Virus record (IMG/VR): IMGVR_UViG_3300044633_000899
Span: 62,001-126,000 of that record
Length of the DNA: 64,000 bases
Direction: 5' to 3' (one strand)
In this document: positions 33,061 through 57,537 of the stretch, in pieces
Position numbering within the stretch: position 1 is the stretch's first letter
Layout of the letters: each line of letters opens with the position of its first letter
Program-made: the position numbers and the translations under genes
Notes under the pieces: model-generated
What the model saw: only the letters and a program-made list of their open reading frames with translations
What the model was told of the DNA's origin: nothing
Databases searched by the model: none

Positions 33061-33083
33061 AATAGTAGTAACGAATTAATAAT

Positions 33084-35418: not shown

Positions 35419-35420
35419 TT

Positions 35421-36713: not shown

Positions 36714-36758
36714 TAAGAACCTACAATAAAACATAAGAAAAATATTATTTCGTAAAAG

Positions 36759-36790
36759 TTTGGTGTTTTAAATATAAATACATATATTTG
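36759..36790 (+). promoter_or_regulatory. Bacteroidota-type promoter TTTG-N20-TATATTTG
   Basis: Both elements present, directly before the ATG at 36795. Confidence 0.7.
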
Positions 36791-36794
36791 TCCT

Positions 36795-37941: not shown

Positions 37942-37942
37942 T

Positions 37943-38395
37943 ATGAATCTACAAGAATCCATAAGAAGAATATTACGGGAAGAAACAACACTCCAAAGTA
38001 GAGTAAACGAGTTGATTAACACAAAAGGGGTTGTTCTTGCATCAACAATGGTTGGTGGACTTGACACACTATCAAAGATATTAAACTTAGATTTAAATGA
38101 TGTGGACACACAAGAAAAATTAGTTAAAAACTTTATTAATTTTTATGATCTTAAAGAAGAAAGTATTATTATAGATTCTTTAGAAGTTAGGACAACGGTA
38201 AATAGGGGAAAGGTTATCAAAGTAAATGGAACGGTTAATGACGATTGGGAGAATTTTAGTTCGTGGTACGTTCTCCACATTTGTGGTGAGATGGAGAGAT
38301 TTTTCCCATTTAACACTCAACCTTATGATCACTCTGTTTTTACCAATAGTGGTGTTAAAATATTCATAGAATCGGAATTTTTATACGAAGAATAG
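37943..38395 (+). CDS. leader + family-A-like N-terminal module
   Basis: MNLQESIRRILREE; LI...G...A...VGG...L. Confidence 0.65.
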   Translation: MNLQESIRRILREETTLQSRVNELINTKGVVLASTMVGGLDTLSKILNLDLNDVDTQEKLVKNFINFYDLKEESIIIDSLEVRTTVNRGKVIKVNGTVNDDWENFSSWYVLHICGEMERFFPFNTQPYDHSVFTNSGVKIFIESEFLYEE

Positions 38396-38423
38396 AATAA
38401 GAAAAAATAGATATTTATAACAT

Positions 38424-43794: not shown

Positions 43795-43996
43795 TTAATA
43801 CCTATACCCCCTTATCTCATTATGATCCCCCTGGAATGGGGGTGTATGACAATATGACCCCCCCGCCCCTCCCGTATCCCCCCCATATATGACATTTTGA
43901 CACCCAAAAAGGGGGCTCAGAGGTAAAGATAACATATTCGTAAAAAATTTTCTGGGAAAAATTTCCCAATTTTTGGGAGTATGATTTTTGTTTTTA

Positions 43997-44497
43997 TTAT
44001 AAGTTATTTCTTTTTTGGTTTATTTTATCATACTTTTCTTGTATACGTAAATCATTTTGACTAAGTGTCCTTTTTAGTTTATTGATTCTAGATTTTATTT
44101 TTTCTTCTTTTGATTTGGGGGGTGTTTTTTGTTTATACCCTACTGATTTTATTTTTGTGGTTCTATGTACTTCAGTATGACAATTCACACAGAGGGTAAT
44201 TAAATCCGAATTTCTATATTCCCAAGGTGGAACACCCCCAACTTTATATATTAAATGGTGTACTTGTAGGTTATGTTTTAACCCGCAATGTTGACAAGTG
44301 TGGTTATCTCTTTTAAGAATTATAAGACGTTTACGTTTCCATCTATCATCTAATAGTAGTTCGGCATATTGTTGTTTTCTATTCACATTCAAAGAATAGA
44401 AAATAATTTTAACATAAAAAAGTATTTTCCAGAAACACGACCGTATATTTAAGGTTAAGTCAAAATCTAAAAAAAATTTTCTGGGAAAAATTGACAT
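43997..44497 (-). CDS. HNH endonuclease (true start probably downstream of the annotated one)
   Basis: RW..KR..IL.RDNHTCQHCG...LQVHH..LITLCVNCH. Confidence 0.82.
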   Translation of the reverse strand: MSIFPRKFFLDFDLTLNIRSCFWKILFYVKIIFYSLNVNRKQQYAELLLDDRWKRKRLIILKRDNHTCQHCGLKHNLQVHHLIYKVGGVPPWEYRNSDLITLCVNCHTEVHRTTKIKSVGYKQKTPPKSKEEKIKSRINKLKRTLSQNDLRIQEKYDKINQKRNNL

Positions 44498-44536
44498 TAA
44501 TTTTAAATAGTATTATCATTAAATAAAATTTTAATT

Positions 44537-45004
44537 ATGGAATACAGTGAAGATAAAATAAATGATGGTTGGCGGACAGTACACAATAAATTAGGAATGA
44601 CAATATATTGGGATATCCAGAGTCTAAAAAAAAGATTCAAAAATGAAGAACCATTAAAATTAAAAATGGAATCAATGACAGATTCACTTATTAATCGACT
44701 TATAAAAAACCCAAAGATTGATTATTTTAGTGAAGACTTTATGTCTTACTACAATACAGACCCAACATTCTACAAAAAACTTATTACTGACGAATATATT
44801 AGAGAATATGAAAATAAATTCCACTTATTATATGATTTCCATAATGAATTGGAAACCCATAAAAACAATATTGAAGTTATTTTGAAAAGAATCAAAACTA
44901 AAAAAGATAAAACAGAAGAAGATTACAAATATGTTGAGTTTTTAAAAGATTACATTTTAACAATAAAAGAAAAGTTTTCAGACAAAATAAATGACCTAGT
45001 TTAA
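44537..45004 (+). CDS. hypothetical protein
   Basis: TTGACA-N17-TATCAT promoter at about 44491-44519. Confidence 0.6.
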   Translation: MEYSEDKINDGWRTVHNKLGMTIYWDIQSLKKRFKNEEPLKLKMESMTDSLINRLIKNPKIDYFSEDFMSYYNTDPTFYKKLITDEYIREYENKFHLLYDFHNELETHKNNIEVILKRIKTKKDKTEEDYKYVEFLKDYILTIKEKFSDKINDLV

Positions 45005-45017
45005 AGTTAATTAACCC

Positions 45018-45047
45018 CCCCACCTCATCAAGTGGGGTTTTTTATTT
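45018..45047 (+). terminator. intrinsic terminator, repeated at 52452-52478
   Basis: CCCCAC-CTCATCAA-GTGGGG followed by T-tract; 27 nt identical to the 52452 copy. Confidence 0.7.
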
Positions 45048-45161
45048 CCCTATAAACACAACCCCCCCCTTTCTAGAATAACTCCAATTTCTAAAAAAAA
45101 ATTTTTGGTATATAAGCCCCACCTCATCAATAGATTTTCACATCAACATATATTTATTAAT

Positions 45162-45560
45162 ATGAAAATTATTATTACTGAAGACCAACATAACAAATTA
45201 AAAGATAATTTAATGAAACTTATTAATCGTTCCGAATTTAGTGTTGGGGTTAAAGCGGTTGGTGGTTTAAAGAACTTGATTAAAATTTTATATGATGGTG
45301 ATTATAATTCATTTGTTAAATATGTGTCTGATGATTTAATTTACAACACACATAAAGTTAGACATCATTATTTTTTATTTGATTGTAACATCTCTATCTT
45401 TTTAGATCATTCAGAGAGATATAACCCTGTTTTTAGTTTTAGACCTAGTTGTTTTAATAGTGTTATGCGGGAGAAATATGGTGTGGACGATAAATATATT
45501 TCTTCCATATGGAAACAATATTCAAACTATGTTATTAATAGGTATTTAAAAGAGAATTAA
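45162..45560 (+). CDS. leader + family-A-like module
   Basis: MKIIITEDQHNKL; LI....F..GVKAVGGLKNL. Confidence 0.65.
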   Translation: MKIIITEDQHNKLKDNLMKLINRSEFSVGVKAVGGLKNLIKILYDGDYNSFVKYVSDDLIYNTHKVRHHYFLFDCNISIFLDHSERYNPVFSFRPSCFNSVMREKYGVDDKYISSIWKQYSNYVINRYLKEN

Positions 45561-45679
45561 TTTTTATTTCCCTATAAACACGACCCCCTCTTTTTATAAG
45601 GGTCAATTCCTCAAAAAAAATTTTTGATATTTTTTGGTTAAAATTTGATATTTTAATTTTTTATAATTACATTTACATT

Positions 45680-46615
45680 ATGAATAAAATAATGTCTGTA
45701 AGAATTATTATTAATATGCGTGACTTAAAACGTATAAAAGGTTCATTCAAGAAAAACTTTAACAATATTAATCTGTCTTTAGATATTTTAAAAGGTTTGC
45801 CATTTTTAGAGGAAGATACTAAAAATCGTATAGAGAATGGATTATTACCACAACCAGGTAAAATCTTTGAAACTATGGTAACCCAACAAATTGCAAACAT
45901 ATTAGAATGTAAATATGTTGGTAATGGTTGGTATCGTGGTGAGGATTATTCTCTATATCAAGATGGTGGATCAAATAAATCCGACTTAACCATATATAAT
46001 CATCTAAATGGTATATCATATAGAATAGAGATAAAGGAAAGTTTGTCATATGTAAAAACTTGTGGGTTCACCTATGACGATGATGGGGGCATACTTGAAT
46101 GTACCTCAAGAGATTTGGTTTTCAATAACTATGTTAAGTCTTTATTTAATGGTGGTGTTTTGTCTGACTATAACATATTGGATAATTTGGGTGTTAATAA
46201 GAGATATGAACTTAATGTTGGTATTGATAACATTACAACAACCAGATTTGATTACATTATATCACACAACGGTGACGGTGTATTAAATGTTATGACGATT
46301 GATGAGTATAATAGTAACCATTCATTTTTAATTGAAGTTAGAAGTTGTAGTAGAAACACCAAAAAAGTATTTACCCCAAATAAATTGGATATTATTGATG
46401 ATTTCTTATATTTGAATGTTGACGAAGTTTCTGAGATGAAACAGAGGGGTGGTAACAAATCATCAAGATATAAATACATAACAAAAAACACCACATTTTC
46501 ATTTAAAAAAAATAATATTGAGATGTTGGGTAATAATAACTTTCGTATTCACATTGGTAATGTTAATCAACACGTTGGGGATGTGTCTATAATCCAAAAA
46601 CCGTTATTTGTGTAA
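45680..46615 (+). CDS. putative type II restriction endonuclease
   Basis: FE..V...KSDLTI-x11-IEIKE PD-(D/E)xK pattern; convergent with an MTase. Confidence 0.55.
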   Translation: MNKIMSVRIIINMRDLKRIKGSFKKNFNNINLSLDILKGLPFLEEDTKNRIENGLLPQPGKIFETMVTQQIANILECKYVGNGWYRGEDYSLYQDGGSNKSDLTIYNHLNGISYRIEIKESLSYVKTCGFTYDDDGGILECTSRDLVFNNYVKSLFNGGVLSDYNILDNLGVNKRYELNVGIDNITTTRFDYIISHNGDGVLNVMTIDEYNSNHSFLIEVRSCSRNTKKVFTPNKLDIIDDFLYLNVDEVSEMKQRGGNKSSRYKYITKNTTFSFKKNNIEMLGNNNFRIHIGNVNQHVGDVSIIQKPLFV

Positions 46616-47773
46616 CCACAATAAATCAACATCAATAAATAAATCATTTAATTTAGACACCAGTTCCATTGGGTGTTTAATATTCTCTTGTTTTTTTCCC
46701 GCGTTCATCTTATATACTTTATTGATATTTTCACTTTCCAGTATTTCTTGAATTAACGACATATCAACTGGTACGTCAATCCAGGGTAATGATAATAAAG
46801 TCTTTTTGGTTAACGTCATTGAACTGTCGGATGTTCTCCACCACCAATATAAGTATGTACTATTTAATAGAATTAATGCTTTGTGGTAAGTCTCAAAATC
46901 CTTTAAATATATTACAATTTGACCAGACCTATCTAATTTTTTTGTTGATGCTGAAATAAAATATCTTGGTGTACTTGTAATATACAAGGGATAATCTGTT
47001 ATTTCTGTTGTATATTTTGATAATGTATCATTATGTATATATTTTGTTGTGTTCGGAGATGTTTTATAAAAAATTTCTTTTGTAAATAAACCATCATCAA
47101 GTTTATCATCAAGAGATAATATCATTTTATCCCTCTGGTTACTTTGCCATCTAATTTGTGTTGTTGTTTTTCTATTATTGTCTGTGTTATGAGCTATGAT
47201 TATTGATACCCTAACTGTTGCGTCATCAAAAATATGTCCTGGTATGTTATCAAAATGATATGTTGTTAGTGATGAATATGTTAATAAACCTTCTCGTGTT
47301 TTTTTAAAATCCCTACCATTTGAAAATGACATTGGGTTTATACTAATAAATCCCCTTGCTTTTTGAATCACCTCATCTAAAAAATATGCGTACATATCAT
47401 TGTCCATATATTTGAAATATGGGGGGTTCATTATTACGTAGTCATAATCAATTGTTAATGTTAAAAAATCCTCATTGTAACTACTTGGTACCACACCAAA
47501 CTTTTCCATAAAATTGTTTAATGCAATGGCTAACTGATATTCATCTTTCTCATTAATTATTAACCTATTTTTAATAAAATCAATCGGATCTTCTTGTATT
47601 GAGGCCAAAAGAATTGATAAAACACCCAAACCACAACAAGGATCAAACCATATTCCTTTACCATCATCAAACACTTTGGTTTTATTCACCATAAATAACG
47701 CAATATCTTCTGGTGTGTGAAAAATTCCCTCCTTCTTCTTCTTTTCTTGGTCGTACGGATTGATAAAATTCAT
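46604..47773 (-). CDS. N6-adenine/N4-cytosine DNA methyltransferase
   Basis: FHTPEDIA, FDPCCGLG (motif I), MNPPY (motif IV). Confidence 0.85.
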   Translation of the reverse strand: MNFINPYDQEKKKKEGIFHTPEDIALFMVNKTKVFDDGKGIWFDPCCGLGVLSILLASIQEDPIDFIKNRLIINEKDEYQLAIALNNFMEKFGVVPSSYNEDFLTLTIDYDYVIMNPPYFKYMDNDMYAYFLDEVIQKARGFISINPMSFSNGRDFKKTREGLLTYSSLTTYHFDNIPGHIFDDATVRVSIIIAHNTDNNRKTTTQIRWQSNQRDKMILSLDDKLDDGLFTKEIFYKTSPNTTKYIHNDTLSKYTTEITDYPLYITSTPRYFISASTKKLDRSGQIVIYLKDFETYHKALILLNSTYLYWWWRTSDSSMTLTKKTLLSLPWIDVPVDMSLIQEILESENINKVYKMNAGKKQENIKHPMELVSKLNDLFIDVDLLWLHK

Positions 47774-47955
47774 ATCATTAATAATACATCTTTTTTTCTA
47801 TTATGTAAACGTCTTGAACCATAGAACTTTGTTATCCCATTCTAAAACACGACGCCTTCTTTTTATAAATAGAAAATTCTAAAAAAAAAATTTTGATAAT
47901 TTTCTTGGAAAAACCGAAATTATTTATATCTTTGTTTATCATTAATCTAAAAACT

Positions 47956-48174
47956 ATGAAAAACTTTTTTATTTATCAGATTTATTTTATTTTAAACCTT
48001 CTTGTTTTAAAATTATTCATTGGGTTTCTTATTACCTATTTTATTGGTGGTAGTTATCTTTATGTCATTATGTGTTCGCTTGTTATTGCGATGGATTTGG
48101 ATGATATGATTGATCGTCAACGAAACTTTGATAGATATTATCCCCACTTCAGTAATAAGTGGTTGTATTTTTAA
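47956..48174 (+). CDS. small membrane protein
   Basis: Hydrophobic; CTTG-N19-TATCTTTG promoter 47904-47934. Confidence 0.55.
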   Translation: MKNFFIYQIYFILNLLVLKLFIGFLITYFIGGSYLYVIMCSLVIAMDLDDMIDRQRNFDRYYPHFSNKWLYF

Positions 48175-48220
48175 CCATTAATCCCCATTTTCTAATAAGA
48201 ATTTGGGGTTTTTATTTTTT
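48142..48220 (+). terminator. repeated intergenic hairpins/terminators
   Basis: CCCCACTTCAGTAATAAGTGGTT recurs at 48648; CCCCATT..TGGGGTTTTT recurs at 49010 and 50173. Confidence 0.65.
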
Positions 48221-48250
48221 GATATATTTATTAAATAAAACAAAGAATTT

Positions 48251-48628
48251 ATGAAAAAAGTAATAAGATTAACAGAATCTGATTTAACAAGAATTGTTAA
48301 ACGAGTAATTAAAGAAAATAGATTGACCTCTCCACCGAATGAAAATGTCCGAAAATTAATGTCATTACTTACCAAGAATAACTTAATTGATCTTGAATAT
48401 GTTAATGTGTATCAAGATTATATTGAGGTTTATAAAATAATTGGTTGCGACTCAGGTTATTTTATGGACAACTTTATTCGTCTTCATCCGGAAGATATTG
48501 ATAATGATGTTGTTTATGTTGATGGTGAACATTATGGGGAAGAAATTGATGAAGAGGAGTATGAGGAGGTTTTGGAATATATTATAGAAAATTGGGAACC
48601 ATTACTAAATCTTGAGTTTGTTGAGTAA
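48251..48628 (+). CDS. leader-bearing acidic protein
   Basis: MKKVIRLTESDLTRIVKRVIKE. Confidence 0.7.
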   Translation: MKKVIRLTESDLTRIVKRVIKENRLTSPPNENVRKLMSLLTKNNLIDLEYVNVYQDYIEVYKIIGCDSGYFMDNFIRLHPEDIDNDVVYVDGEHYGEEIDEEEYEEVLEYIIENWEPLLNLEFVE

Positions 48629-48741
48629 TTTAAAACACTTTATTTACCCCCACTTCAGTAATAAGTGGTTATATTTTTAATTTTTTTCAGAAAGTTCGGT
48701 TTTTTTATTAATGTATATATTTATATATAAATAAAAATATT

Positions 48742-48996
48742 ATGAAAAGAATAATTAGACTAACAGAATCCGATTTAACTAGGATTATTAAAAGAACCAT
48801 TATAGAGATGGAGGAAGATGACGACGAAGTTATTGTAAATGTTAACGACATCGCAAAAGAAGACATGGCCTGTTTTAATGATGTTGCAACACCTTCAGGA
48901 ATGAACGGAGGAAAATATAAGAGAAAAAAGAAAGGTTGTCAAACTAAAACAAGATATAAAAGTAAAACAAAATATTACGGAAACAATAGATTCTAA
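48742..48996 (+). CDS. leader-bearing protein with basic C-terminus
   Basis: MKRIIRLTESDLTRIIKRTIIE. Confidence 0.65.
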   Translation: MKRIIRLTESDLTRIIKRTIIEMEEDDDEVIVNVNDIAKEDMACFNDVATPSGMNGGKYKRKKKGCQTKTRYKSKTKYYGNNRF

Positions 48997-49111
48997 ATTA
49001 ACCATTAAACCCCATTTTAGAAATAATTTGGGGTTTTTTATTTTTCTTCCTTTCTGATTGGGTGTGTTAACCGAAATTCGTTTTTTTTGTTTTATATGAT
49101 ATTTATTGTAT

Positions 49112-49501
49112 ATGAAAAAAATTGTAAAACTAACCGAATCAGATTTAACAAGAATTGTTAAACGAGTACTTAAAGAGGAAGTTACCGAGACCAATATTCT
49201 TCACTGGGAGTTACCAAAAAAATTAGTTAAAGAGCTTGAGGATAGAGTACCAGATGGACTGAAATTATATAGGGATAATGATATTGTTTATGTTCAGGAA
49301 CTTTGGTTTGATACAAGAAAAATTATTTTTGCTCTTTACACACAAGAGCAATTTGGTGTTGAGATAAATTATGATGACTCATTTGATGTTCCGTCAGGTT
49401 ATAATGGGTATTATAGTGTTGATTTTGATAGTGTATCAAAAGACCTCAAAATTTTTATTTTAAGGAGATTAGAACATAACTATATTAGATATTTATTATA
49501 A
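49112..49501 (+). CDS. leader-bearing hypothetical protein
   Basis: MKKIVKLTESDLTRIVKRVLKE. Confidence 0.7.
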   Translation: MKKIVKLTESDLTRIVKRVLKEEVTETNILHWELPKKLVKELEDRVPDGLKLYRDNDIVYVQELWFDTRKIIFALYTQEQFGVEINYDDSFDVPSGYNGYYSVDFDSVSKDLKIFILRRLEHNYIRYLL

Positions 49502-49502
49502 T

Positions 49503-49694
49503 ATGAAAATCATTATAACGGAACAACAATACAAATACATATCAGAAATGATTAAACTTGACATTAAAGTTGGGGATGTGATTATGGGTGGTAAATTTAA
49601 AAACAAAAAGATTGTTGTTAAAACCATTGGTAAAAATGATAAGGGGGATATTACAATTAATGGTAAACCACTATTAAGATTTAGACTATTATGA
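49503..49694 (+). CDS. leader + small conserved beta-domain
   Basis: MKIIITEQQY; IKVGDVIMGGKFKNKKIVVK.IG. Confidence 0.65.
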   Translation: MKIIITEQQYKYISEMIKLDIKVGDVIMGGKFKNKKIVVKTIGKNDKGDITINGKPLLRFRLL

Positions 49695-50161
49695 AAAAAA
49701 TTATTATTACAGAAGAACAAAAGGAAACCTTGGTTGATAAATTATTATATATGATTGACCTTCACGGTTTTGATGTTGCGGTATCCACCGTTGGGTCGGT
49801 TAAAAACTTGGTTAAAGTGATTGGTAAAGATAATTTTGAAACCGTTTTAATTGACCGTAAATTTGATCCAAATGAAATTAAACTGGTAACATCAACTTAT
49901 GATGTTCCGGATACTTTCACTAGATTTGGTGGTGTTGACCGTAATAAATTACTTAGGTTTCTCAATAGGTTTGGTCCAATGTATCTACTCACTATTGGTG
50001 ATGATAGTGTCTTATACCAAAACCAAGATGATACCGAATATTTCACAACAGCATTTGGGTTTTCACCAATGGAACGAACCCTTGACAGAGTTGGGTTAAC
50101 CAAACTGAAAATTAAAGATGTTATAACCATATTTGACGATAAAATTGATGAACAATATTAA
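49691..50161 (+). CDS. leader + family-A-like module
   Basis: MKKIIITEEQ; MID..GF.VA...VGS..NL. Confidence 0.65.
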   Translation: MKKIIITEEQKETLVDKLLYMIDLHGFDVAVSTVGSVKNLVKVIGKDNFETVLIDRKFDPNEIKLVTSTYDVPDTFTRFGGVDRNKLLRFLNRFGPMYLLTIGDDSVLYQNQDDTEYFTTAFGFSPMERTLDRVGLTKLKIKDVITIFDDKIDEQY

Positions 50162-50226
50162 ATTTTTTTAAACCCCATTCCTAATAAGAACTTGGGGTTT
50201 TTTGTTTTCCCATATATTTATTTAAT

Positions 50227-50592
50227 ATGAAATTTATTATATCAGAATCTCAATATGAAAGATTATTTGGTGAACTTCCACTTTCTCTTAAAAGAAGGAT
50301 AACTCGGAGTGACCTAGAATTTTTGGATGGTGAGTTGGTCTATTATATTGCAAATACCCGGCCTATGAATAAATTTGAAGACTTCTTAGAACATGTCATC
50401 AATAACCTTCTATATGAATTTATTATGAATATTAAAAGTGATGAGATTGATGTTGATGAGGATGATGAATACATTGAGACCAGCCGAGATAAAGTTATGG
50501 GTGTATATTGGCAAATAAAACCATTTCTTGAAAAAAGATATAATGATTGGATACATAGGGCTTGGGAAAAAAAGAAAAGTCTATTTTTATAA
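50227..50592 (+). CDS. leader + RR-family domain
   Basis: MKFIISESQYERL; LKRRIT. Confidence 0.65.
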   Translation: MKFIISESQYERLFGELPLSLKRRITRSDLEFLDGELVYYIANTRPMNKFEDFLEHVINNLLYEFIMNIKSDEIDVDEDDEYIETSRDKVMGVYWQIKPFLEKRYNDWIHRAWEKKKSLFL

Positions 50593-50642
50593 AATTCTTC
50601 CTTTCTGATTGGACGTTTTAACAAAAAAAATATGTTATATAT
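50591..50642 (+). repeat. 52-bp exact duplication of a promoter-upstream block (second copy 52822-52873)
   Basis: AAAATTCTTCCTTTCTGATTGGACGTTTTAACAAAAAAAATATGTTATATAT; partial third copy near 49043. Confidence 0.8.
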
Positions 50643-50659
50643 TTATATATAAAACCAGT

Positions 50660-52441
50660 ATGAAAAAAATAATTAGATTAACAGAATTGGATTTGGTATC
50701 AACGATAAATAAAATTATCACTGAACATAAATTTATTACTGAAATAGGTGATTTACAATCACCATATGAAAAATTAATGACTTGCAAATTCACATCTGAT
50801 GGTAAACATGTTGTTTATGAAGGTAAAGCATACTCAACAATAAATGGGAACGAAGTCTTAATTAATGAAAATTGGAGTTTGAGTGATATATTACATACTG
50901 GTGCGGATCTTTTATCTGCTGGTATGGATTTTGTAATCCCAGGTTCTGGTGCTGTTATTGATGTTTTAAATGCACTTAGTTATATTATTGAAGCACAATT
51001 TAAATCTGAAAAAGAAAGAGATTCACTATATATTATGGCGGCAATAACATTCGCTTTTGTTATATTGCCTGGACCATTACAAGCAATTGCAATACCACTT
51101 AAACGAGCAGTTAAGACTGGTGTTGGTTTGGCGTCAAAAATTGTTGTTAAGGGTTTAAAAATTGTTGGTGGAATTTTGGATACAATATTACTTAAATTAC
51201 CAAGTAAAATAAAATCTGCATTACAATCAACTTTGGCAAAAAAGATTCTCGGTAGATTTAGAGGTAAAATTACTGGATTTATTGATAAGTTTACATCAAG
51301 GATTAAACAAATATTATCAACAATTACAGGTAAAACCGGTAAGAAGGGTGTTGAAAATTCAGTAAATGTTAGTTCCGATCAATTTAAAAAAATGTTTGAT
51401 ATTGATAGAACTCTTGGTAAATATGGTTTCAAGGAAACTCCTGAAACAATAAACGCAACATTAAAAAATGTTAACTTTACCAAAGATGGAATAAAAGTTG
51501 TTAATAAAACAACACACAGTCAAGGTCAAGAAGCGTTTTCGGCGGTATTACCTAATAATGTGAGAATGATATTTTATAATAGTAGTAAAGGCTGGATTCC
51601 AATAAAAGGATATAATGGAAAAAAAGCAATACAAATGACAGATATAGACTCAAAGTATGTTAAAGATTTAATATCGGTTTTGAACCGTGAGGGACTGAGT
51701 GGGTTAGGTAAACAAGTTGGTAAACAAGTTGGTAAAAATACCATTACTCCTGTTGCGATACAAGCAGCAAAAAACTTTTTTAGTAGAATACCAAAAATTT
51801 CACAAGGAGCAAAAGTTTTAAGAAAAGCGGGCTTTGCTAAAGGTTATACGTATAAATATATGGGTCCTAAAGGTCCTTTAAAGGGAACAATTTCGGAAAT
51901 AACGGACAGTGGCGTTAAGATATTATTTGAGAAAAACGGTAGGAAATTCACAACAATGGTTCCTGTTGAAACCTTCATTAATAAGGCTGTGGGTGCACCT
52001 TGGTTGAGAAGAGGGTGGGGAGTAACAGTTCCGTTGTTTGTTAAAAGATTTAGTGATATGTTATTAGCTGACGGATCAAATATTGATTATAATAAGTTAG
52101 ATTCTATTCCAGATTTAGATCCCAAACAAACATCATCAGAAACAGAAACTTTTTTACAAGGTGAAGTTGCGGAGTATGAAGGTGAAAGTGATTACACAGT
52201 AAATACAAACGTCCAAAATATCCAAAACGCATTACTAGCATTAGGATATCAATTACCTAATGCAGGTGCTGATGGTAAATTTGGTCCAGAAACAAAAACT
52301 GCTTTAGAGAAATTCCAAAAGGATAATGGTTTAACAACATCCGTAGGAAAAATGGATAGATTAACAACTAAAAAATTGGCGGAAAAATTAAAGGGTAAAA
52401 ACCTTGAACCCGATTTACAAAATAATTTAAACAAAATGTAA
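50660..52441 (+). CDS. leader + pre-toxin-like helical segment + C-terminal PG-binding domain
   Basis: MKKIIRLTELDL; LHTGADLLSAGMDFVIPGSGAVIDVLNALSY; IQNALLALGY....ADGKFGPETK.AL..FQ..NGL. Confidence 0.6.
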   Translation: MKKIIRLTELDLVSTINKIITEHKFITEIGDLQSPYEKLMTCKFTSDGKHVVYEGKAYSTINGNEVLINENWSLSDILHTGADLLSAGMDFVIPGSGAVIDVLNALSYIIEAQFKSEKERDSLYIMAAITFAFVILPGPLQAIAIPLKRAVKTGVGLASKIVVKGLKIVGGILDTILLKLPSKIKSALQSTLAKKILGRFRGKITGFIDKFTSRIKQILSTITGKTGKKGVENSVNVSSDQFKKMFDIDRTLGKYGFKETPETINATLKNVNFTKDGIKVVNKTTHSQGQEAFSAVLPNNVRMIFYNSSKGWIPIKGYNGKKAIQMTDIDSKYVKDLISVLNREGLSGLGKQVGKQVGKNTITPVAIQAAKNFFSRIPKISQGAKVLRKAGFAKGYTYKYMGPKGPLKGTISEITDSGVKILFEKNGRKFTTMVPVETFINKAVGAPWLRRGWGVTVPLFVKRFSDMLLADGSNIDYNKLDSIPDLDPKQTSSETETFLQGEVAEYEGESDYTVNTNVQNIQNALLALGYQLPNAGADGKFGPETKTALEKFQKDNGLTTSVGKMDRLTTKKLAEKLKGKNLEPDLQNNLNKM

Positions 52442-52504
52442 ATACCAACCACACCTCATCAAGTGGGGTTTTTTATTTTGTAATTTTTTCATATATTTAT
52501 TACA

Positions 52505-52819
52505 ATGAAAAATATAAACCAATTATTTCGTAGAAACCCCGGACTACTTGATGAACCTGAAGTAAAACAATTAATTGAATACACCCAGGATCTTGAAGGT
52601 CAAGTTATGGAAAATAAAGTTGATGATGATTATAACAAAGAACATATGTTAAAATCAATGTTATCAGATATTCTATTAAGTTGTAGAGAATATGAAGAGA
52701 ATAAACTTCTACAAGACCGTTACCCAGATTTATATAAGAATCTTGATCCAGACACTTTGGTTAAGAACTTAATGGTTTATATTTTGGATATGAACCGTAA
52801 AAATAATTTAAAACTATGA
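52505..52819 (+). CDS. hypothetical protein
   Basis: TATTTAT upstream. Confidence 0.6.
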   Translation: MKNINQLFRRNPGLLDEPEVKQLIEYTQDLEGQVMENKVDDDYNKEHMLKSMLSDILLSCREYEENKLLQDRYPDLYKNLDPDTLVKNLMVYILDMNRKNNLKL

Positions 52820-52893
52820 AAAAAATTCTTCCTTTCTGATTGGACGTTTTAACAAAAAAAATATGTTATATATATTTATATATAAACATCAAT

Positions 52894-53124
52894 ATGAAAA
52901 GAATAATAAAACTAACAGAGTCTGATGTAACAAGAATTGTTAACAAAATTATAACCGAATCTGAAACAACAGAAATGATGGCACACACTCAAAAATCGTT
53001 AAGACATGAGGCCGTTTTTTTATTAAAAAATTTAGGGTTAAAAACTGAAGATGAAACCGTCAGTGATGTTACAGATATAATTAAATTCATAATACAAAAA
53101 TATGGTGGTAAGGTTTTAGATTAA
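52894..53124 (+). CDS. leader-bearing small protein
   Basis: MKRIIKLTESDVTRIVNKIITE. Confidence 0.65.
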   Translation: MKRIIKLTESDVTRIVNKIITESETTEMMAHTQKSLRHEAVFLLKNLGLKTEDETVSDVTDIIKFIIQKYGGKVLD

Positions 53125-53164
53125 TTACCATTTCCTTTTTTTATAATATGTTTATATATAAATT

Positions 53165-53344
53165 ATGGATAATCAAGAAAAAGCACAAAAGTATAATCAA
53201 CTTATGTATGTTTATACAAAAATACAAAACCAAATTTCATCAATTAAAGGTGAATCATTAGAGTTAAACAATGTACAACTCAGAGAAATTAGTTTATTGG
53301 AAAATAAACTAAGAACCATAATGGAAGAAGCATCACGTTTATAA
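53165..53344 (+). CDS. small coiled-coil protein (59 aa, not in ORF track)
   Basis: MDNQEKAQKYNQLMY...EEASRL; followed by a terminator hairpin. Confidence 0.6.
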   Translation: MDNQEKAQKYNQLMYVYTKIQNQISSIKGESLELNNVQLREISLLENKLRTIMEEASRL

Positions 53345-53350
53345 TTAAAG

Positions 53351-53378
53351 AACTCACAATTAATTTGTGAGTTTTTTT
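53351..53378 (+). terminator. intrinsic terminator
   Basis: AACTCACAA-TTAAT-TTGTGAGTT plus T-tract. Confidence 0.7.
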
Positions 53379-53399
53379 GTTTAATAACTATTTATGTTT

Positions 53400-53699
53400 A
53401 TGGCAAAAGAACTTATTAGACGACATAGACAAATTAAAGATGAACTCATTTTTTTATTATCTGATAATGGACTTGTCTCGTCGTTTAATTTGGGTGATAG
53501 AGACGCTATGACTGATTTTAGGTATATTATGTCAAACATTGTTGCAAGTAAAATTGTGTCCATTGAATTTCCAGATAATTCAAATTTACCTGGTAATTAT
53601 GTTATGCTTAGAAATCAAATCGCAAATTATATTAGGAATGAATTTTATGATGAACTTAATTCAACGTTTAAAAAAACAAAATTCCAATCTGATAATTAA
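53400..53699 (+). CDS. RR-family-like protein
   Basis: ELIRRH; TATTTAT upstream. Confidence 0.55.
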   Translation: MAKELIRRHRQIKDELIFLLSDNGLVSSFNLGDRDAMTDFRYIMSNIVASKIVSIEFPDNSNLPGNYVMLRNQIANYIRNEFYDELNSTFKKTKFQSDN

Positions 53700-54460
53700 T
53701 TAATATTAAGTTCTTTTATCTTATCAAGATCAACAACTGGAATCCATTTGGAAATACCAAGTGTTGGTGAATCTTTATCTTCAGCCCATTTTAAGTAAAA
53801 TTCAAAATTACTACTTTCTCTAAAATCTTCTTCATCCCAAAGATCAAATTTTGAGTAACGCATATTAGGGTTAATTGTTTTATAATATCTATCCATAAAA
53901 TCTCTCAAATCATAGTCAAGTTTATTTATTTCATCATAAAAAACTGAATCGGTATATGTAAATAAATAATGATTTTTATCATTCAACAAATCTAATAGAT
54001 GGTCTTTATGTTGATAATCACTATCATAATGTGTGTTTGTAAATTTATAAAATTTATATAAATCAAAAACAATATCAAAACTTAATAAAGTACCATATTT
54101 TTTTAATGACTCAAGTTTTGGTATAATATCAATAATAAACGGATAACGACCTTTTAATGTTTTAAATAACATATAAAACCCAATATCCTTTTTTTCCTTC
54201 GGCATTTTGTCGTAAGTAGATTCGTTAATGGTTTCTGAAACGTCATCATCAATATCCATATCACCAATTAATACCACATTTGATTTTAAATTATCTTTCC
54301 AGTTATTAAAGTCGTCTTCAGATTTAAACTCTTTAATTATTGATTTATAAAATTCACCATTCTCATCTTGAACCTTTAGTGCTAACCCTTTTTTTATGTT
54401 TGTAGATTCTTTTAACATTATTCGTGTCATTTGATCTTCAGTAATAAGGTATTTTTTCAT
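53696..54460 (-). CDS. leader-bearing two-module protein
   Basis: MKKYLITEDQMTRIMLKE; internal TINES. Confidence 0.65.
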   Translation of the reverse strand: MKKYLITEDQMTRIMLKESTNIKKGLALKVQDENGEFYKSIIKEFKSEDDFNNWKDNLKSNVVLIGDMDIDDDVSETINESTYDKMPKEKKDIGFYMLFKTLKGRYPFIIDIIPKLESLKKYGTLLSFDIVFDLYKFYKFTNTHYDSDYQHKDHLLDLLNDKNHYLFTYTDSVFYDEINKLDYDLRDFMDRYYKTINPNMRYSKFDLWDEEDFRESSNFEFYLKWAEDKDSPTLGISKWIPVVDLDKIKELNIN

Positions 54461-54520
54461 TTTTTATTTCTTTATAAATAAATATCAATAAATTATGTTA
54501 TGTAAATATATTTATAGGAT

Positions 54521-54814
54521 ATGACTAAAGAAGAATTAAAACGATTAAGACGTATTCACGAGGTTAGAGACACAATTGAATTTCAGATGGAAATTCAGGA
54601 TCCTTGTAATTTTGAGGATGGTGATGAGTATGCTGACTTTTGTATTGGTGAGGGTATTAGTTTTTTTTATGGTGATGAAGGTTACGAAAGAACTGATGAT
54701 ACTTTTAATGACGAAACTGAAGACTATCTACGTGATTATATAACCGAGATGATGTATGCCGAATACTTTGATGAATTGGTTACACTTTGGGATGAAAATA
54801 ATGATGAGTGTTAA
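54521..54814 (+). CDS. acidic RR-family-like protein
   Basis: LRRIHEVRD..DPC.F; TATTTAT upstream. Confidence 0.6.
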   Translation: MTKEELKRLRRIHEVRDTIEFQMEIQDPCNFEDGDEYADFCIGEGISFFYGDEGYERTDDTFNDETEDYLRDYITEMMYAEYFDELVTLWDENNDEC

Positions 54815-55239
54815 TGAAAATAATAATAACTGAAAACCAGTATAATATAATTAAAGAAAATATTTCTTTAAAGAAAAAACTACTTAACGTGGTTAAAGAG
54901 TATGGGTTTGATACGGGTATTATTATCACTAGATCAGCCGATAAATTAAAGGAGTTAGCATTTAACAATGATCCGATGGAGTTTTTAAATATATATAACG
55001 ATTTAAAGTCCGTTCAAAGTAAAGAGAGTTCAGATTGGGTTTTATTTTCAAATAAGAAAGATGAAAAATTTATCTTTTACTCAGTGTCAAAAAATATCGC
55101 GTATATTGATTATATTAAAATCTGGTCAATCTTGGAGGACGAATTTAAATTAACTTACATTGAAACTGAAGACTTGACGCAAAAATGGTTATCAACCACT
55201 TACGGATTAACTGGTGTTAAAACAGCACAAATAACATAA
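54814..55239 (+). CDS. family-A paralog 3 (no repeat cassette)
   Basis: MKIIITENQYNIIKENISLK; ends WLSTTYGLTGVKTAQIT. Confidence 0.7.
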   Translation: MKIIITENQYNIIKENISLKKKLLNVVKEYGFDTGIIITRSADKLKELAFNNDPMEFLNIYNDLKSVQSKESSDWVLFSNKKDEKFIFYSVSKNIAYIDYIKIWSILEDEFKLTYIETEDLTQKWLSTTYGLTGVKTAQIT

Positions 55240-55245
55240 TAAGAT

Positions 55246-55788
55246 ATGAAAAAAACTATTAAATTAACAGAATCTGAATTAAAAACTGTAATAACAAAAA
55301 TTATTGAGCAGGCCGCTGGTTATGATGATTTCCAGGTAATGAATCACCACGGAAGAATATCATTGAGAGTGTTAATAACGACTTTGTCTGATTTATTAAG
55401 TGTCTTCAGATCAATTATGAATATCATTGATTCTGAATCACTTGAATATAATACAATTGTAGGTCTATTATATAAAGCAATTGGCATTATAACAGACATT
55501 AATAGTGTTATGGGTGTTGTCTTTAAAGATTTCACTGATAGAGATGTTGTTAGAAAGGGAAAACTATTGGGTAGAGCACTAGAATCTTATCAGGAAAAAC
55601 TAATTACGTTTATGGATATGGGTGAAGAATTAGTAACTAAAGATATGTTACTAACTAAACTGGTTGAGCTAACAGATATTGTGACAATAAAAACCAAAGA
55701 ATATGCTATTGAGTTAACAAATTATCAAAAACGATTTAAATCTAGAATTGATTTTGGTAAAGATGAACCCAAGGGTAGTTTTAACTAA
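55246..55788 (+). CDS. leader-bearing helical protein
   Basis: MKKTIKLTESELKTVITKIIEQ. Confidence 0.65.
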   Translation: MKKTIKLTESELKTVITKIIEQAAGYDDFQVMNHHGRISLRVLITTLSDLLSVFRSIMNIIDSESLEYNTIVGLLYKAIGIITDINSVMGVVFKDFTDRDVVRKGKLLGRALESYQEKLITFMDMGEELVTKDMLLTKLVELTDIVTIKTKEYAIELTNYQKRFKSRIDFGKDEPKGSFN

Positions 55789-55829
55789 GTTTTTTTTGAA
55801 TTAGGGTATATTTATAAAAAAAGAATATT

Positions 55830-57101
55830 ATGGACTTAAAGAAATTATTATTAAGTGAAGGTCAACGTACTAATACAAGAAAAGGTTTGACTAAAAACCT
55901 TATGGAACAGGTTAGTTCTGAATCACAATTTAAATTATCCGAAACAATAACCTTAAAGTCAGCCCAAGCTGCTGGTCAGGATGAATTGAAGTTGTTCAAG
56001 GGGGCTTTGTTCAAAGTAGGAAAAAATAGAATTTTAGTTTCTAATACAAAATACCAAATGGTTAAATCAGATAATGGTAATCCAACAACAGGTACGATAG
56101 AAGGAACAGTACATTATAATTGTAAAGCTGGTAAATTTTATATACCTGGAAAACAAAATACTTATTATAATAAAAACTATGATAATATAAGACCAGATTT
56201 TAAGAAATTCTGTGCTGTTGCTAAACAAACTAAATCAATTGGTGGTGGTGGTAATAAAGTAAATGATCAAAAATTAAATGATTACCCTTGTGTTACAAAA
56301 TTATTAAAAGACGGGAAAGGTAAAGTTTTTGATCAAGAAACGTCAGGTGTAAACCCTATAAAAGACGGTAGTCAATATATTAGTTTTGGTACTTTTCCAA
56401 ACGAGATCAAATTTTTTAACAATGGTCGTTATTACAACGATAAAACCAATAAAGGGGGTGATTATCATTGTGATGGTAATAAAATAATATGGTCTAAAAA
56501 ACAAACAACACCAGAACGTACACCAGGTAGTGGTGGTGCACCAACTACACAATCTCAAACACCAACATTAATTAAACAAATACAAAAAACAATTGGTGTT
56601 ACAGAAACTGGTAAACTTACCGATACTGAAATTCAAACAATATATGATAAGTTAAATCCGTCAGAACAACAAGTTCCAACACCTAGTAACACATCAGATA
56701 ATCAAGCACTAAAAAAGGCACTTGGTGGTAGTTTGGACGCAAAACCATTTGCGTTTGATTATAAAAAGAAGATGGTTAGTGAAGAAATCAATAGAATTAA
56801 AGAAATGATGGGTATTGTTTTAAATGAACAAACGACAACACCAACAGAACAACCAGAAAAGACACCAACAAAAAAATTACAAGAATTATTAAATACTAAA
56901 TTTAGTGCAGGTTTAACTGTTGATGGTAAAATGGGACCAAAAACGGCTCAAGCGATTATAAATGCGTTAGGTAAAGCAACTGTAACAACACCGACACCAA
57001 GTTCCACAAATCAAACGTCAAGTGGTACACCAGTAGATACTAAACCAACTGATAATACGTCATTAGGAACTCCTGAACAAGAGACGTTTACAACATTTTA
57101 A
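55830..57101 (+). CDS. leader-linked multi-module protein with PG-binding-like segments
   Basis: MDLKKLLLSE; internal EEINRIKEMMGIVLNEQ; LQELLN....GLTVDGKMGPKT; T/P-rich linkers. Confidence 0.6.
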   Translation: MDLKKLLLSEGQRTNTRKGLTKNLMEQVSSESQFKLSETITLKSAQAAGQDELKLFKGALFKVGKNRILVSNTKYQMVKSDNGNPTTGTIEGTVHYNCKAGKFYIPGKQNTYYNKNYDNIRPDFKKFCAVAKQTKSIGGGGNKVNDQKLNDYPCVTKLLKDGKGKVFDQETSGVNPIKDGSQYISFGTFPNEIKFFNNGRYYNDKTNKGGDYHCDGNKIIWSKKQTTPERTPGSGGAPTTQSQTPTLIKQIQKTIGVTETGKLTDTEIQTIYDKLNPSEQQVPTPSNTSDNQALKKALGGSLDAKPFAFDYKKKMVSEEINRIKEMMGIVLNEQTTTPTEQPEKTPTKKLQELLNTKFSAGLTVDGKMGPKTAQAIINALGKATVTTPTPSSTNQTSSGTPVDTKPTDNTSLGTPEQETFTTF

Positions 57102-57104: not shown

Positions 57105-57127
57105 ATGGGGATTATGAAATCCCCATT
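57105..57127. terminator. bidirectional terminator between convergent genes
   Basis: ATGGGGAT-TATGAA-ATCCCCAT hairpin. Confidence 0.6.
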
Positions 57128-57537
57128 ACTTCTAATTCAAAAATTAACTTCTCACCAGCTAAAGGATGATTTGCATCAATCACAACTGATTCGTCTTTAA
57201 TTTCCAAAACTTTAACTAACGCTGGACCTTCAGGACCAAATGTTTGTAAAAGCATACCAACCTCAACATTTTCAGGTACGTTTGTTTTTACAACGTCAAG
57301 AATTAATTCCTCATTTCTTTCACCATACGCTTCTCTAGGATCAATCTCAACGGTTTTTTTATCACCAACCATCATTCCAATTAGTCCTGTTTCAAAACCA
57401 GGGATTAATTGTCCTTCACCTAATTTAGCGTTCAAAGGTTCTCTACCTTCTAATAATGAAGAATCAAATACGGATCCGTCAGTTAATTTTCCTGTGTAAT
57501 TCACAACTACACTACTACTTTCTGTTACTTTACTCAT
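57112..57537 (-). CDS. FKBP-type peptidyl-prolyl isomerase (SlyD/FkpB-like)
   Basis: V.VNYTGKL.DGSVFDSS, LG.GQLIPGFE.GL, D.NHPLAG..L.FE. Confidence 0.92.
   Translation of the reverse strand: MSKVTESSSVVVNYTGKLTDGSVFDSSLLEGREPLNAKLGEGQLIPGFETGLIGMMVGDKKTVEIDPREAYGERNEELILDVVKTNVPENVEVGMLLQTFGPEGPALVKVLEIKDESVVIDANHPLAGEKLIFELEVMGIS

What the first reader, a model, noticed from the sequence alone, without database searches (positions are those of the whole stretch)
44420..55830. Self-contained gene cassettes (TATTTAT promoter, leader gene, CCCCA/TGGGG terminator) with shared flanking DNA
Seen: most leader genes have TATTTAT about 4-20 nt before the ATG (for example 33498, 35101, 38424, 45162, 48251, 48742, 49112, 50227, 50660, 52894, 55830). 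Terminators recur nearly verbatim: 27 nt identical at 45021 and 52452; 33 nt near-identical at 48142 and 48648; CCCCATT..TGGGG at 48183, 49010 and 50173. Leader DNA is also shared (GATTTAACAAGAATTGTTAAACGAGTA in both 48251 and 49112). Inference: an integron-like array of interchangeable late-expressed cassettes shuffled by short-homology recombination, analogous to the promoter-stem-loop cassette arrays of T4-like early regions.
Basis: partly seen in the sequence, partly recalled or inferred. Interest (0 to 1): 0.65.

Follow-up and report, generated by a model that had tools for sequence, protein, structure and literature searches.

The report
Tagged gene cassettes in jumbo phage
A 296-kb lake-water phage with a T4-type head carries an array of small genes, each with its own promoter and terminator, and many begin with the same short peptide tag fused to unrelated proteins; the tag is probably an address label that loads them into the capsid, as in the internal proteins of phage T4.

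Summary
TATTTAT is the most enriched 7-mer upstream of genes genome-wide (107 of 370 genes).

Relatives keep the flanks and a few island genes but replace everything between them. Breakpoints fall at promoter/ATG and terminator borders. The array is not integron-like: it has no integrase and no attC sites, and every cassette has its own promoter.

It encodes N-terminal peptide tags:
- a 22-residue MKKxIRLTESDLTRIVKRVIKE tag;
- MKIIITE;
- MNLQ..IRKILRE.

At least 39 genes with about 30 unrelated protein bodies carry these tags. Synonymous changes are frequent inside the tag, and similarity stops abruptly after its last Glu. The LTESDL tag heads more than 1000 uncharacterised metagenomic protein clusters.

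The genome encodes a T4 gp21-type prohead protease, which cleaves after L/I-x-E, and every tag ends in such a motif.

My best reading is a hyperplastic array of probably late genes for capsid-targeted internal proteins. It combines T4's capsid-targeting sequence with PeSL-style modular shuffling. Capsid targeting and late timing are inferred, not shown.

The parts
43800..43990 (+). Conserved C-rich non-coding block; left anchor of the variable region
   Evidence: 82% identical to L027 9743-9889; sequence; a hairpin lies at 43953-43979.
43997..44497 (-). HNH endonuclease gene at the left edge of a 4.3-kb block (43973-48248) that relatives L027-L029 lack
   Evidence: Pfam HNH E=3e-5; block absent from L027-L029.
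44405..44536 (+). Copy 1 of the 65-nt intergenic repeat (AAACACGAC ... run of A, then TTTTTG), about 103 nt before the ATG
   Evidence: Alignment A1; this element occurs genome-wide only here.
44537..45004 (+). 155-aa ORFan cassette
   Evidence: No Pfam or PHROG hit.
45018..45047 (+). Intrinsic terminator; 27 nt identical to 52452
   Evidence: folds at -10.7 kcal/mol.
45030..45161 (+). Copy 2 of the 65-nt repeat, plus TATTTAT at 45151
45162..45560 (+). 132-aa gene with MKIIITE tag
45555..45679 (+). Copy 3 of the 65-nt repeat
45680..46615 (+). 311-aa ORFan, convergent with the methyltransferase gene
46604..47773 (-). N6-adenine DNA methyltransferase
   Evidence: Pfam N6_Mtase E=1.4e-6; PHROG DNA methyltransferase.
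47820..47955 (+). Copy 4 of the 65-nt repeat
47956..48174 (+). 72-aa hydrophobic ORF
48138..48231 (+). Two terminators (48144-48162 and 48183-48208) followed by the TATTTAT promoter motif at 48225
48251..48628 (+). 125-aa gene; codons 1-22 (48251-48316) form the LTESDL tag
   Evidence: conserved island in L027-L029.
48644..48724 (+). Terminator (95% identical to 48138) plus TATTTAT at 48718
48742..48996 (+). 84-aa gene with LTESDL tag
49007..49106 (+). Terminator of the CCCCA..TGGGG family, a partial copy of the TTCTTCCTTTCTGATTGG repeat, and TATTTAT at 49100
49112..49501 (+). 129-aa gene with LTESDL tag
49503..49694 (+). 63-aa gene with MKIIITE tag; TATTTAT at 49490
49691..50161 (+). 156-aa gene with MKKIIITE tag
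50170..50221 (+). Terminator plus TATTTAT at 50215
50227..50592 (+). 121-aa gene with MKFIISE tag; conserved island in L027
50591..50659 (+). 5' flank repeat (97% identical to 52822-52886) containing TATTTAT at 50640
50660..52441 (+). 593-aa protein with a degenerate LTESDL tag and a C-terminal peptidoglycan-binding domain; orthologs elsewhere carry other tags and have other neighbours
   Evidence: PG_binding_1 E=7e-13.
52446..52500 (+). Terminator (27 nt identical to 45021) plus TATTTAT at 52494
52505..52819 (+). 104-aa untagged ORFan
52822..52893 (+). Second copy of the 5' flank repeat, with TATTTAT at 52873
52894..53124 (+). 76-aa gene with LTESDV tag
53165..53344 (+). 59-aa gene, followed by a strong terminator at 53347-53377
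   Evidence: folds at -14.1 kcal/mol.
53394..53699 (+). 101-aa gene; TATTTAT at 53389
53696..54460 (-). 254-aa gene with MKKYLITE tag; TATTTAT on the minus strand
   Evidence: only 78% identical in L021, against 93-98% for the flanks.
54521..54814 (+). 97-aa gene; TATTTAT at 54509
54814..55239 (+). 141-aa member of the 9-copy MKIIITE paralog family
55246..55788 (+). 180-aa gene with LTESEL tag
   Evidence: 74% identical in L021.
55830..57101 (+). 423-aa gene; TATTTAT at 55809; terminator at 57104-57127
   Evidence: 50% identical with an insertion in L021.
57112..57537 (-). FKBP-type isomerase gene; right anchor conserved in relatives
   Evidence: Pfam FKBP_C E=7e-21.
32545..39947 (+). Second array of the same kind: MNLQ..IRKILRE-tagged genes with 9 tag copies, three of them internal and in frame (33552, 36369, 38982)

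Best explanation
The region is a hyperplastic stretch of a 296-kb freshwater jumbo phage whose head module is T4-type. It holds about 20 small, mostly ORFan genes built as autonomous units.

Each unit has an upstream intrinsic terminator. Next comes a phage-specific -10-like element, A-TATTTAT-(A/T), ending 4-17 nt before the ATG, so the mRNAs are leaderless or nearly so. It is probably read by host RNA polymerase carrying a phage sigma factor. The ORF follows.

Many ORFs begin with one of a few conserved N-terminal peptide tags. These are the 22-residue LTESDL tag, MKIIITE, MNLQ..ILRE and KKILxE. Each ends in hydrophobic-x-Glu, after which the protein body is unrelated.

I infer that the tags work like the capsid-targeting sequences of T4 internal proteins. 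They would bind the scaffolding core, load the protein into the prohead, and be cut off after the Glu by the gp21-type protease. The bodies would then be packaged with the DNA and ejected into the host.

The repeated terminator-promoter-tag DNA gives the phage's recombination system short homologies. New bodies can be swapped in, duplicated, fused or deleted at those points.

Shown: the architecture, the protein-level conservation of the tags, and cassette turnover in relatives.
Inferred: promoter activity and late timing, capsid targeting, and cleavage.
For: Phage type:
- Peptidase_S77 (gp21) hit, E=5e-23, and Gp23 major capsid hit, E=3e-64.
- The head module runs portal, small ORFs, protease, scaffold-position gene, capsid gene.
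- The protease is 32% identical to T4 gp21.
- The capsid protein places I-N-E|A where T4 gp23 has its L-T-E|A cleavage site.

Tags:
- 39 tagged genes fall into 30 body families.
- Among eight LTESDL paralogs, codons 1-22 give 273 identical, 129 synonymous and 214 non-synonymous pairs. Codons 23-44 give 13, 15 and 588.
- 1063 protein clusters share the tag, and all that were named are called hypothetical.
- All 30 sampled proteins carry a near-invariant tag followed by unrelated sequence.
- h-h-(K/R)-E motifs are about 10x enriched at residues 10-29.
- Orthologous bodies carry different tags.
- In-frame internal tag copies occur in larger proteins.
- A tagged gene sits between portal and protease, and relative L010 lacks it.
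- The S77 protease is present in 9 of 10 large contigs chosen only by the tag, and in all 5 that are at least 90% complete.

T4 precedent:
- gp21 cuts after L/I-x-E. A 10-aa capsid-targeting sequence suffices for packaging. The internal proteins are hypervariable and only the targeting sequence is conserved.
- T4 ipII and ipIII share MKTYQEFIAE and have upstream stem-loops.

Promoter:
- The motif precedes the portal, protease and scaffold-position genes.
- It is rare in the first 100 kb, which holds ThyA and the sigma factor gene.
- 27 of 39 tagged genes have it, against 78 of 331 untagged genes.

Shuffling.
Against: - No virion proteome, N-terminal sequencing or RNA data exist for this phage or any relative. 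No RNA run holds the sequence.
- The tags have no sequence similarity to T4 internal proteins.
- The tag is 22 residues, against 10 in T4.
- The residue after the putative cut is N, S, Q or E rather than T4's Ala.
- About 40 packaged protein species would be many.
- No cultured phage carries the LTESDL tag or the 149-aa MKIIITE family, so nothing can be transferred from experiments.
- Co-occurrence with the S77 protease may only reflect one clade.
- T4 gp55, gp45, gp44, gp46 and gp47 have no detectable homologs, so T4-type late transcription cannot be assumed.
- Breakpoints at gene borders are expected under selection even without repeat-mediated recombination.
Confidence: 0.55

Rival explanations
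1. The tags are functional N-terminal modules unrelated to the capsid. Examples would be an amphipathic helix for oligomerisation, docking to a common host or phage partner, or intracellular localisation. The cassettes would then encode cytoplasmic accessory or anti-defence proteins.
For: The tag is invariant across more than 1000 clusters, which implies a conserved binding partner but does not identify it. Most bodies are ORFans. Protease-tag complex prediction gave no answer.
Against: - This reading does not explain why every tag type ends in hydrophobic-x-Glu, the gp21 specificity.
- It does not explain the internal in-frame tag copies at module junctions.
- It does not explain the tagged gene inside the head module.
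- It does not explain the peptidoglycan-binding body.
Confidence: 0.22
2. Simple tandem duplication and rapid divergence: the cassettes are fast-evolving paralogs of one or a few ancestral genes. The tag and flanks are merely the slowest-evolving remnant, and no modular exchange occurs.
For: The non-coding repeats are local to 44-53 kb. The 125-aa and 129-aa genes share a short internal motif (repeat families D15 and D19). The 149-aa MKIIITE family has 9 true paralogs.
Against: - There are 30 body families without detectable similarity, and similarity drops abruptly exactly after codon 22.
- The same tag sits on over a thousand unrelated bodies of 70-210 aa.
- Orthologous bodies carry different tags and have different neighbours.
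- Recombinant chimeras occur in close relatives.
Confidence: 0.12
3. One reading: an integron-like site-specific cassette system in which the shared leader DNA and hairpins are recombination sites.
For: Hairpins and 5' DNA are repeated, and gene content varies between relatives.
Against: - No integrase is among the ORFs, all of which were scanned or are too small.
- The hairpins are followed by T runs and lie after stop codons, so they are terminators.
- Each cassette has its own promoter.
- The leader is coding and varies synonymously.
Confidence: 0.03
4. TATTTAT is not a promoter. It would be an AT-rich translation-initiation context, or a chance product of 30% GC intergenic DNA.
For: The motif lies very close to the ATG (4-6 nt in 40 genes). 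The genome lacks Shine-Dalgarno-like sequences.
Against: - Strand asymmetry is 107 against 49 for the reverse complement in the same windows.
- Spacing is bimodal rather than fixed.
- The motif is class-specific along the genome, with 0 of 18 genes in the 80-90 kb bin against 11 of 18 at 110-120 kb.
- It follows terminators directly.
- It is conserved upstream of head genes in relatives.
Confidence: 0.08

Closest known systems
T4 internal proteins IPI, IPII, IPIII and their capsid-targeting sequence (CTS), processed by the gp21 prohead protease
   Same: - A short conserved N-terminal peptide heads otherwise unrelated, hypervariable small proteins.
- The peptide ends in L/I-x-E.
- A gp21-family protease is encoded.
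- The genes are preceded by stem-loops.
- T4 ipII and ipIII begin MKTYQEFIAE and ipI has ..ITE|A, compared with MKIIITE.. and MKKIIRLTE.. here.
- The reviews state that only the CTS is conserved among T-even internal proteins.
   Different: - There is no sequence homology to the T4 internal proteins.
- The main tag is 22 residues, not 10.
- At least four tag types are used on about 39 genes, against 3-4 genes in T4.
- Tags also occur internally in larger proteins.
- Packaging and cleavage are untested here.
PeSL elements (promoter-early stem-loop) of T4-type phages (Arbiol et al. 2010, PMC2839356; Comeau et al. 2014, PMC4122927)
   Same: - Small composite terminator/promoter repeats are concentrated in hyperplastic regions and lie upstream of ORFans.
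- Insertions, deletions and replacements between relatives are bounded by them (searches compared).
   Different: - The promoter part here is not sigma-70-like. Sigma-70 scan hits equal chance, 90 against 96.5.
- The motif is probably a late, phage-specific one.
- The homology extends into the coding region as a peptide tag.
- Mini-circles were not tested.
Propeptide-bearing inner-body and ejection proteins of phiKZ-like and SPN3US giant phages
   Same: Many head-internal proteins are cleaved after Glu at a short motif by a gp21-related protease.
   Different: Those proteins form paralog families and do not share a single portable N-terminal tag. The head genes here are closer to T4 than to phiKZ.
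T4 late promoter TATAAATA read by gp55
   Same: It is a single AT-rich -10-type octamer without a -35 element, placed in front of virion genes.
   Different: On the coding strand the motif reads TATTTAT(A/T), not TATAAATA. No gp55 or gp45 homolog was found. A sigma-70-family factor is encoded instead.
Integron gene cassettes
   Same: Arrays of small, interchangeable ORFan genes.
   Different: There is no IntI and no attC. Each cassette has its own promoter. Exchange appears to be by homologous recombination.

Membership tests
T4-type internal protein / CTS system | A gp21-family (Peptidase_S77) prohead protease is encoded by the phage | tested here: met
   PF03420 E=5e-23; 32% identity to T4 gp21.
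T4-type internal protein / CTS system | A conserved short N-terminal peptide is shared by otherwise unrelated proteins | tested here: met
T4-type internal protein / CTS system | The peptide ends at an L/I-x-E cleavage motif | tested here: met
   Tags end in VIKE, IITE or ILRE. The motif is positionally enriched. The capsid protein keeps I-N-E|A at the T4 gp23 cleavage site.
T4-type internal protein / CTS system | The proteins are present in the virion with the propeptide removed | not testable with these tools
   There is no isolate and no proteome. No cultured phage carries the tag.
T4-type internal protein / CTS system | Sequence homology to T4 IPI, IPII or IPIII | tested here: not met
   No PHROG or Pfam hit. 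The T4 N-termini differ.
PeSL modular-shuffling elements | Repeated composite stem-loop plus promoter motifs in intergenic DNA of hyperplastic regions | tested here: met
PeSL modular-shuffling elements | The promoter part matches the host sigma-70 early consensus | tested here: not met
   90 sigma-70-like sites against 96.5 expected. The motif is TATTTAT.
PeSL modular-shuffling elements | Indel and replacement breakpoints between relatives lie at the elements | tested here: met
   Gene-border selection cannot be excluded as a contributor.
PeSL modular-shuffling elements | Mini-circles are formed by exchange between neighbouring elements | not testable with these tools
   Only assembled contigs were available. 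The joints seen have short sides.
Integron | An IntI tyrosine recombinase lies adjacent to the array | tested here: not met
   No recombinase is among the ORFs of 43-58 kb. The remaining ORFs are under 181 aa.
Integron | attC recombination sites bound promoterless cassettes | tested here: not met
   The hairpins are terminators with T runs. Each cassette has its own TATTTAT motif.
T4 gp55-dependent late promoter | TATAAATA on the coding strand, with gp55, gp33 and gp45 | tested here: not met
   The motif orientation differs. phmmer with T4 gp55 and gp45 found nothing.
Intrinsic (rho-independent) terminator | A GC-containing stem-loop followed by a U run, placed after a stop codon | tested here: met

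The most novel reading that the evidence does not exclude
The LTESDL, MKIIITE and MNLQ peptides would be portable capsid-loading and cleavage tags used by a large clade of uncultured 150-320 kb aquatic phages with T4-type heads. More than 10% of each proteome would then be an exchangeable arsenal of packaged, ejected effector proteins. Internal tags would mark polyprotein cut sites. The tag would give a purely sequence-based way to list the injected proteins of phages that have never been cultured, and a ready-made packaging tag for engineering.
Probability: 0.4. Interest if true: 0.8.

Novelty: new variant of a known kind. Interest (0 to 1): 0.62.

Why it matters
If the tags are capsid-targeting signals, they identify from sequence alone which proteins uncultured jumbo phages inject with their DNA. 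In T4, that protein class includes anti-restriction factors. The tags would also show how such arsenals diversify, by swapping bodies behind a fixed promoter-tag module.

The tag heads more than 1000 uncharacterised protein clusters in lake and marine metagenomes. A literature search for LTESDL found no paper containing it. One cleavage or packaging experiment would therefore annotate a large block of viral dark matter.

The finding also extends PeSL-type modular shuffling to a distant lineage that is T4-like only in its head, and to a different promoter class.

Tried and rejected
- A megablast of the region against deposited phages found nothing.
- tblastn of the LTESDL tag and of the 149-aa MKIIITE family against deposited phages found nothing. 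No experimental data can therefore be borrowed.
- Pfam and PHROG scans of 30 proteins gave only a methyltransferase, PG_binding_1, HNH, FKBP and ThyA. All tagged bodies remain ORFans.
- The ESM Atlas returned only viral hypothetical clusters with scores below 0.9.
- Complex prediction of protease plus tag peptide gave no answer, with scores of 0.00 and 0.01. This is evidence neither for nor against binding.
- phmmer with T4 gp55, gp45, gp44, gp46 and gp47 found no hits. The idea of T4-type late transcription was dropped in favour of a phage sigma-70-family factor. No phage RNA polymerase beta subunit was found.
- A Bacteroidota-type -7 promoter (TAnnTTTG) was considered as a host clue. It is not enriched, with 35 genes against 27 for the reverse complement. 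The host stays unknown.
- Rfam found only a tRNA in 40-58 kb.
- No RNA runs hold the sequence, so start sites could not be mapped.
- The joints have short sides and less than 95% likeness. I use them only to show that the elements recur in other contexts, not as proof of deletions in this genome.
- Repoila et al. 1994 (PMC395341) could not be read. It is cited only through the review read.

Full report
**What the genome is.** The window is bases 62001-126000 of a single 296,330-bp IMG/VR virus record. The record has 30% GC and about 370 ORFs covering 93% of the sequence, and its two ends overlap. The DNA occurs in lake-water metagenomes, and no RNA run holds it.

The genome encodes a T4 gp21-type prohead protease (PF03420, E=5e-23) and a Gp23-type major capsid protein (E=3e-64). 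The head module runs portal, three small ORFs, protease, a 71-aa ORF, a 508-aa gene in the scaffold position, then the capsid gene. The nearest capsid proteins are only 41-46% identical: uncultured huge phages, Microcystis phage Mel-JY01 and the Flavobacterium 'immuto' phages.

T4 gp55, gp45, gp44, gp46 and gp47 have no detectable homologs. Only the head is demonstrably T4-like. A sigma-70-family factor is encoded near 23.3 kb, and no RNA polymerase beta subunit is present.

**Checking the observation.** TATTTAT is the most frequent and most enriched 7-mer in the 50 nt before genes. Within 60 nt upstream, 107 of 370 genes have it, at 10.9x expectation. Its reverse complement occurs in 49 of the same windows. 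Of the 143 ATATTTAT sites, 75 lie sense-upstream of a gene. The motif ends 4-6 nt or 12-17 nt before the ATG.

The extended consensus is A-TATTTAT-(A/T), with no -35-like partner. Sigma-70-type sites are at chance level. Terminator-like hairpins are 3.4x over shuffles, and they fold stably before T runs.

The motif precedes the portal, protease and scaffold-position genes and their homologs in relatives. It is rare in the first 100 kb, which holds thymidylate synthase and the sigma factor gene, and dense from 100 to 180 kb. This fits a class-specific, probably late, promoter read by host polymerase with a phage sigma factor. That is an inference. With 4-6 nt spacing, the mRNAs would be essentially leaderless.

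The 'shared leader DNA' is coding. Genome-wide counts are:
- 10 genes starting with an LTESDL-type tag; eight of them keep the full 22-codon register MKKxIRLTESDLTRIVKRVIKE;
- 19 starting MK(K)IIITE;
- 4 starting MNLQ..IRKILRE;
- 6 with a KKILxE variant.

Among eight LTESDL paralogs, codons 1-22 give 273 identical, 129 synonymous and 214 mostly conservative non-synonymous codon pairs. Codons 23-44 give 13, 15 and 588. Selection therefore acts on the peptide, and similarity stops exactly after Glu22.

The 39 tagged proteins fall into 30 body families. A search restricted to residues 1-40 found 1063 protein clusters, and all that were named are called hypothetical. All 30 sampled proteins show a near-invariant tag followed by unrelated sequence, and two carry a second, internal tag.

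In the window's other array (32.5-39.9 kb) the MNLQ tag occurs nine times. Three of those copies are in frame inside larger proteins. No deposited phage carries the LTESDL tag. No paper containing LTESDL was found.

**Why I read the tags as capsid-targeting propeptides.** T4 gp21 cleaves after L/I-x-E. The first 10 residues of IPIII suffice to load proteins into the prohead core. T-even internal proteins are hypervariable, and only this sequence is conserved. T4 ipII and ipIII both begin MKTYQEFIAE, ipI has ..ITE|A, and each gene is preceded by a stem-loop.

Here every tag type ends in hydrophobic-x-Glu: VIKE, IITE, LTE or ILRE. The stricter motif [VIL][IL][KR]E occurs 61 times in the proteome, and 26 of those end at residues 10-29. 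The capsid protein aligns I-N-E|A with T4 gp23's L-T-E|A cleavage site, so protease specificity is probably conserved. The proteases themselves keep G-I-L-(V/I)-E near their N-termini.

Further support:
- A tagged gene lies between portal and protease, and relative L010 lacks it.
- One body has a peptidoglycan-binding domain.
- Of ten large IMG/VR contigs chosen only because they carry the tag, nine encode the S77 protease. That includes all five that are at least 90% complete. So do five of five relatives found through another gene.

None of this shows packaging or cleavage. The co-occurrence could simply reflect one clade. Complex prediction gave no answer.

**Cassette turnover.** A 25.8-kb contig from another sample is 99.98% identical and colinear, so it is uninformative.

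L021 is colinear with 53.4-63.3 kb. Its flanking genes are 93-98% identical at the protein level, but the genes at 53.7-57.1 kb are 50-78% identical.

L027-L029 share the C-rich block 43827-43972 and the FKBP gene at 57.1 kb. Between these they keep only three islands: 48249-48684, 50220-50612 and 55526-55650.

The 4.3-kb block 43973-48248 is absent from L027-L029. It holds an HNH endonuclease, a 155-aa ORFan, an MKIIITE gene, a 311-aa ORFan, an N6-methyltransferase and a 72-aa ORF. In the window this block is punctuated by four copies of a 65-nt repeat found nowhere else in the genome. L027 has a single copy at the same position.

Island borders fall at the promoter/ATG on the left and just past the terminator on the right.

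The 593-aa protein has orthologs in at least four other genomic contexts, and they carry a different tag.

In four lake metagenomes, contig depth is high on terminator-promoter-tag segments and near zero on bodies. Homology ends cluster at the ATGs, at 48316 (the last base of tag codon 22), and at terminator stems. I take this only as showing that the elements recur in many contexts.

L027 and L028 are about 99% identical. They differ by a deletion that fuses two adjacent paralogs at a short shared stretch. This is a direct example of short-homology recombination in this lineage.

**Comparison with known systems.** The architecture combines two T4 themes. One is the capsid-targeting sequence with hypervariable internal proteins. 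The other is PeSL-type modular shuffling.

It differs from the T4 systems in five ways:
- promoter class;
- tag length;
- number of tag types and of tagged genes;
- internal tags in larger proteins;
- a lineage whose replication and transcription genes are not T4-like.

It is not an integron. There is no integrase or attC, and each cassette has its own promoter.

**Verdict.** My best explanation is a hyperplastic array of autonomous, probably late cassettes encoding proteins with capsid-targeting-like tags.

| Claim | Confidence |
|---|---|
| Cassette architecture | about 0.9 |
| Modular turnover | about 0.85 |
| Promoter role of TATTTAT | about 0.6 |
| Capsid targeting by the tags | about 0.45 |

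Noticed in passing
window 42846-42918 (-): A tRNA-Glu (anticodon UUC) lies just left of the variable region. It is the only tRNA in the window.
   Followed up: partly
window 43800-43990: A C-rich non-coding block with runs of C in a 30% GC genome. It is conserved at 82% in L027-L029 directly upstream of the cassette array. No Rfam match; function unknown.
   Followed up: partly
window 41281-41944: About 660 nt with no ATG-started ORF of 50 aa or more, yet 73% identical to L027 7266-7931. It could be a conserved non-coding element or an unusual gene.
   Followed up: no
window 45680-47773: A 311-aa ORFan is convergent with, and overlaps by 12 nt, an N6-adenine methyltransferase gene. Both lie inside the strain-specific 4.3-kb block next to an HNH endonuclease. 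This could be a restriction-modification-like pair or an orphan methyltransferase.
   Followed up: no
G000 162873-165968 (outside the window; L025:2873-5968): The portal gene encodes 1031 aa, against 609 aa in relative L010. The extra roughly 424 residues carry an HNH endonuclease domain, which suggests an intein or in-frame homing element in the portal.
   Followed up: partly
window 33498-35048, 35421-36713, 38424-39947: In-frame internal copies of the MNLQ tag, without Met, at residues about 19, 317 and 187. In L027 the same tag sequence starts separate genes. This suggests gene fusion or fission at tags, or polyproteins.
   Followed up: partly
window 49044-49061, 50591-50659, 52822-52886: A further 5' flank repeat containing TTCTTCCTTTCTGATTGG lies upstream of three LTESDL-type genes. 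The two long copies are 97% identical. It has no obvious hairpin and its role is unknown. L027 has a similar string after its 121-aa homolog.
   Followed up: no
L027 11991-12614 versus L028 3329-3475: L028 has one chimeric 193-aa gene where L027 has two adjacent paralogs of 149 and 203 aa. The junction lies in a shared stretch encoding SYKVYTALLTQSG.
   Followed up: yes
G000 about 23349-23561 and 189574-189762: A phage-encoded sigma-70-family factor (Sigma70_r2, E=5e-18) and a weak second candidate in the structural region (E=0.005). Either could read the TATTTAT motif.
   Followed up: partly
L030 (G003 29791-33273) and G003 233494-233940: The 268.7-kb relative G003 has two separate Peptidase_S77 hits, so it may carry two prohead protease genes.
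   Followed up: no
window 10370-11344 (-) and 35421-36713 (+): Two paralogous bodies within one genome carry different tag types, KKILKE and MNLQ..VLKE.
   Followed up: partly
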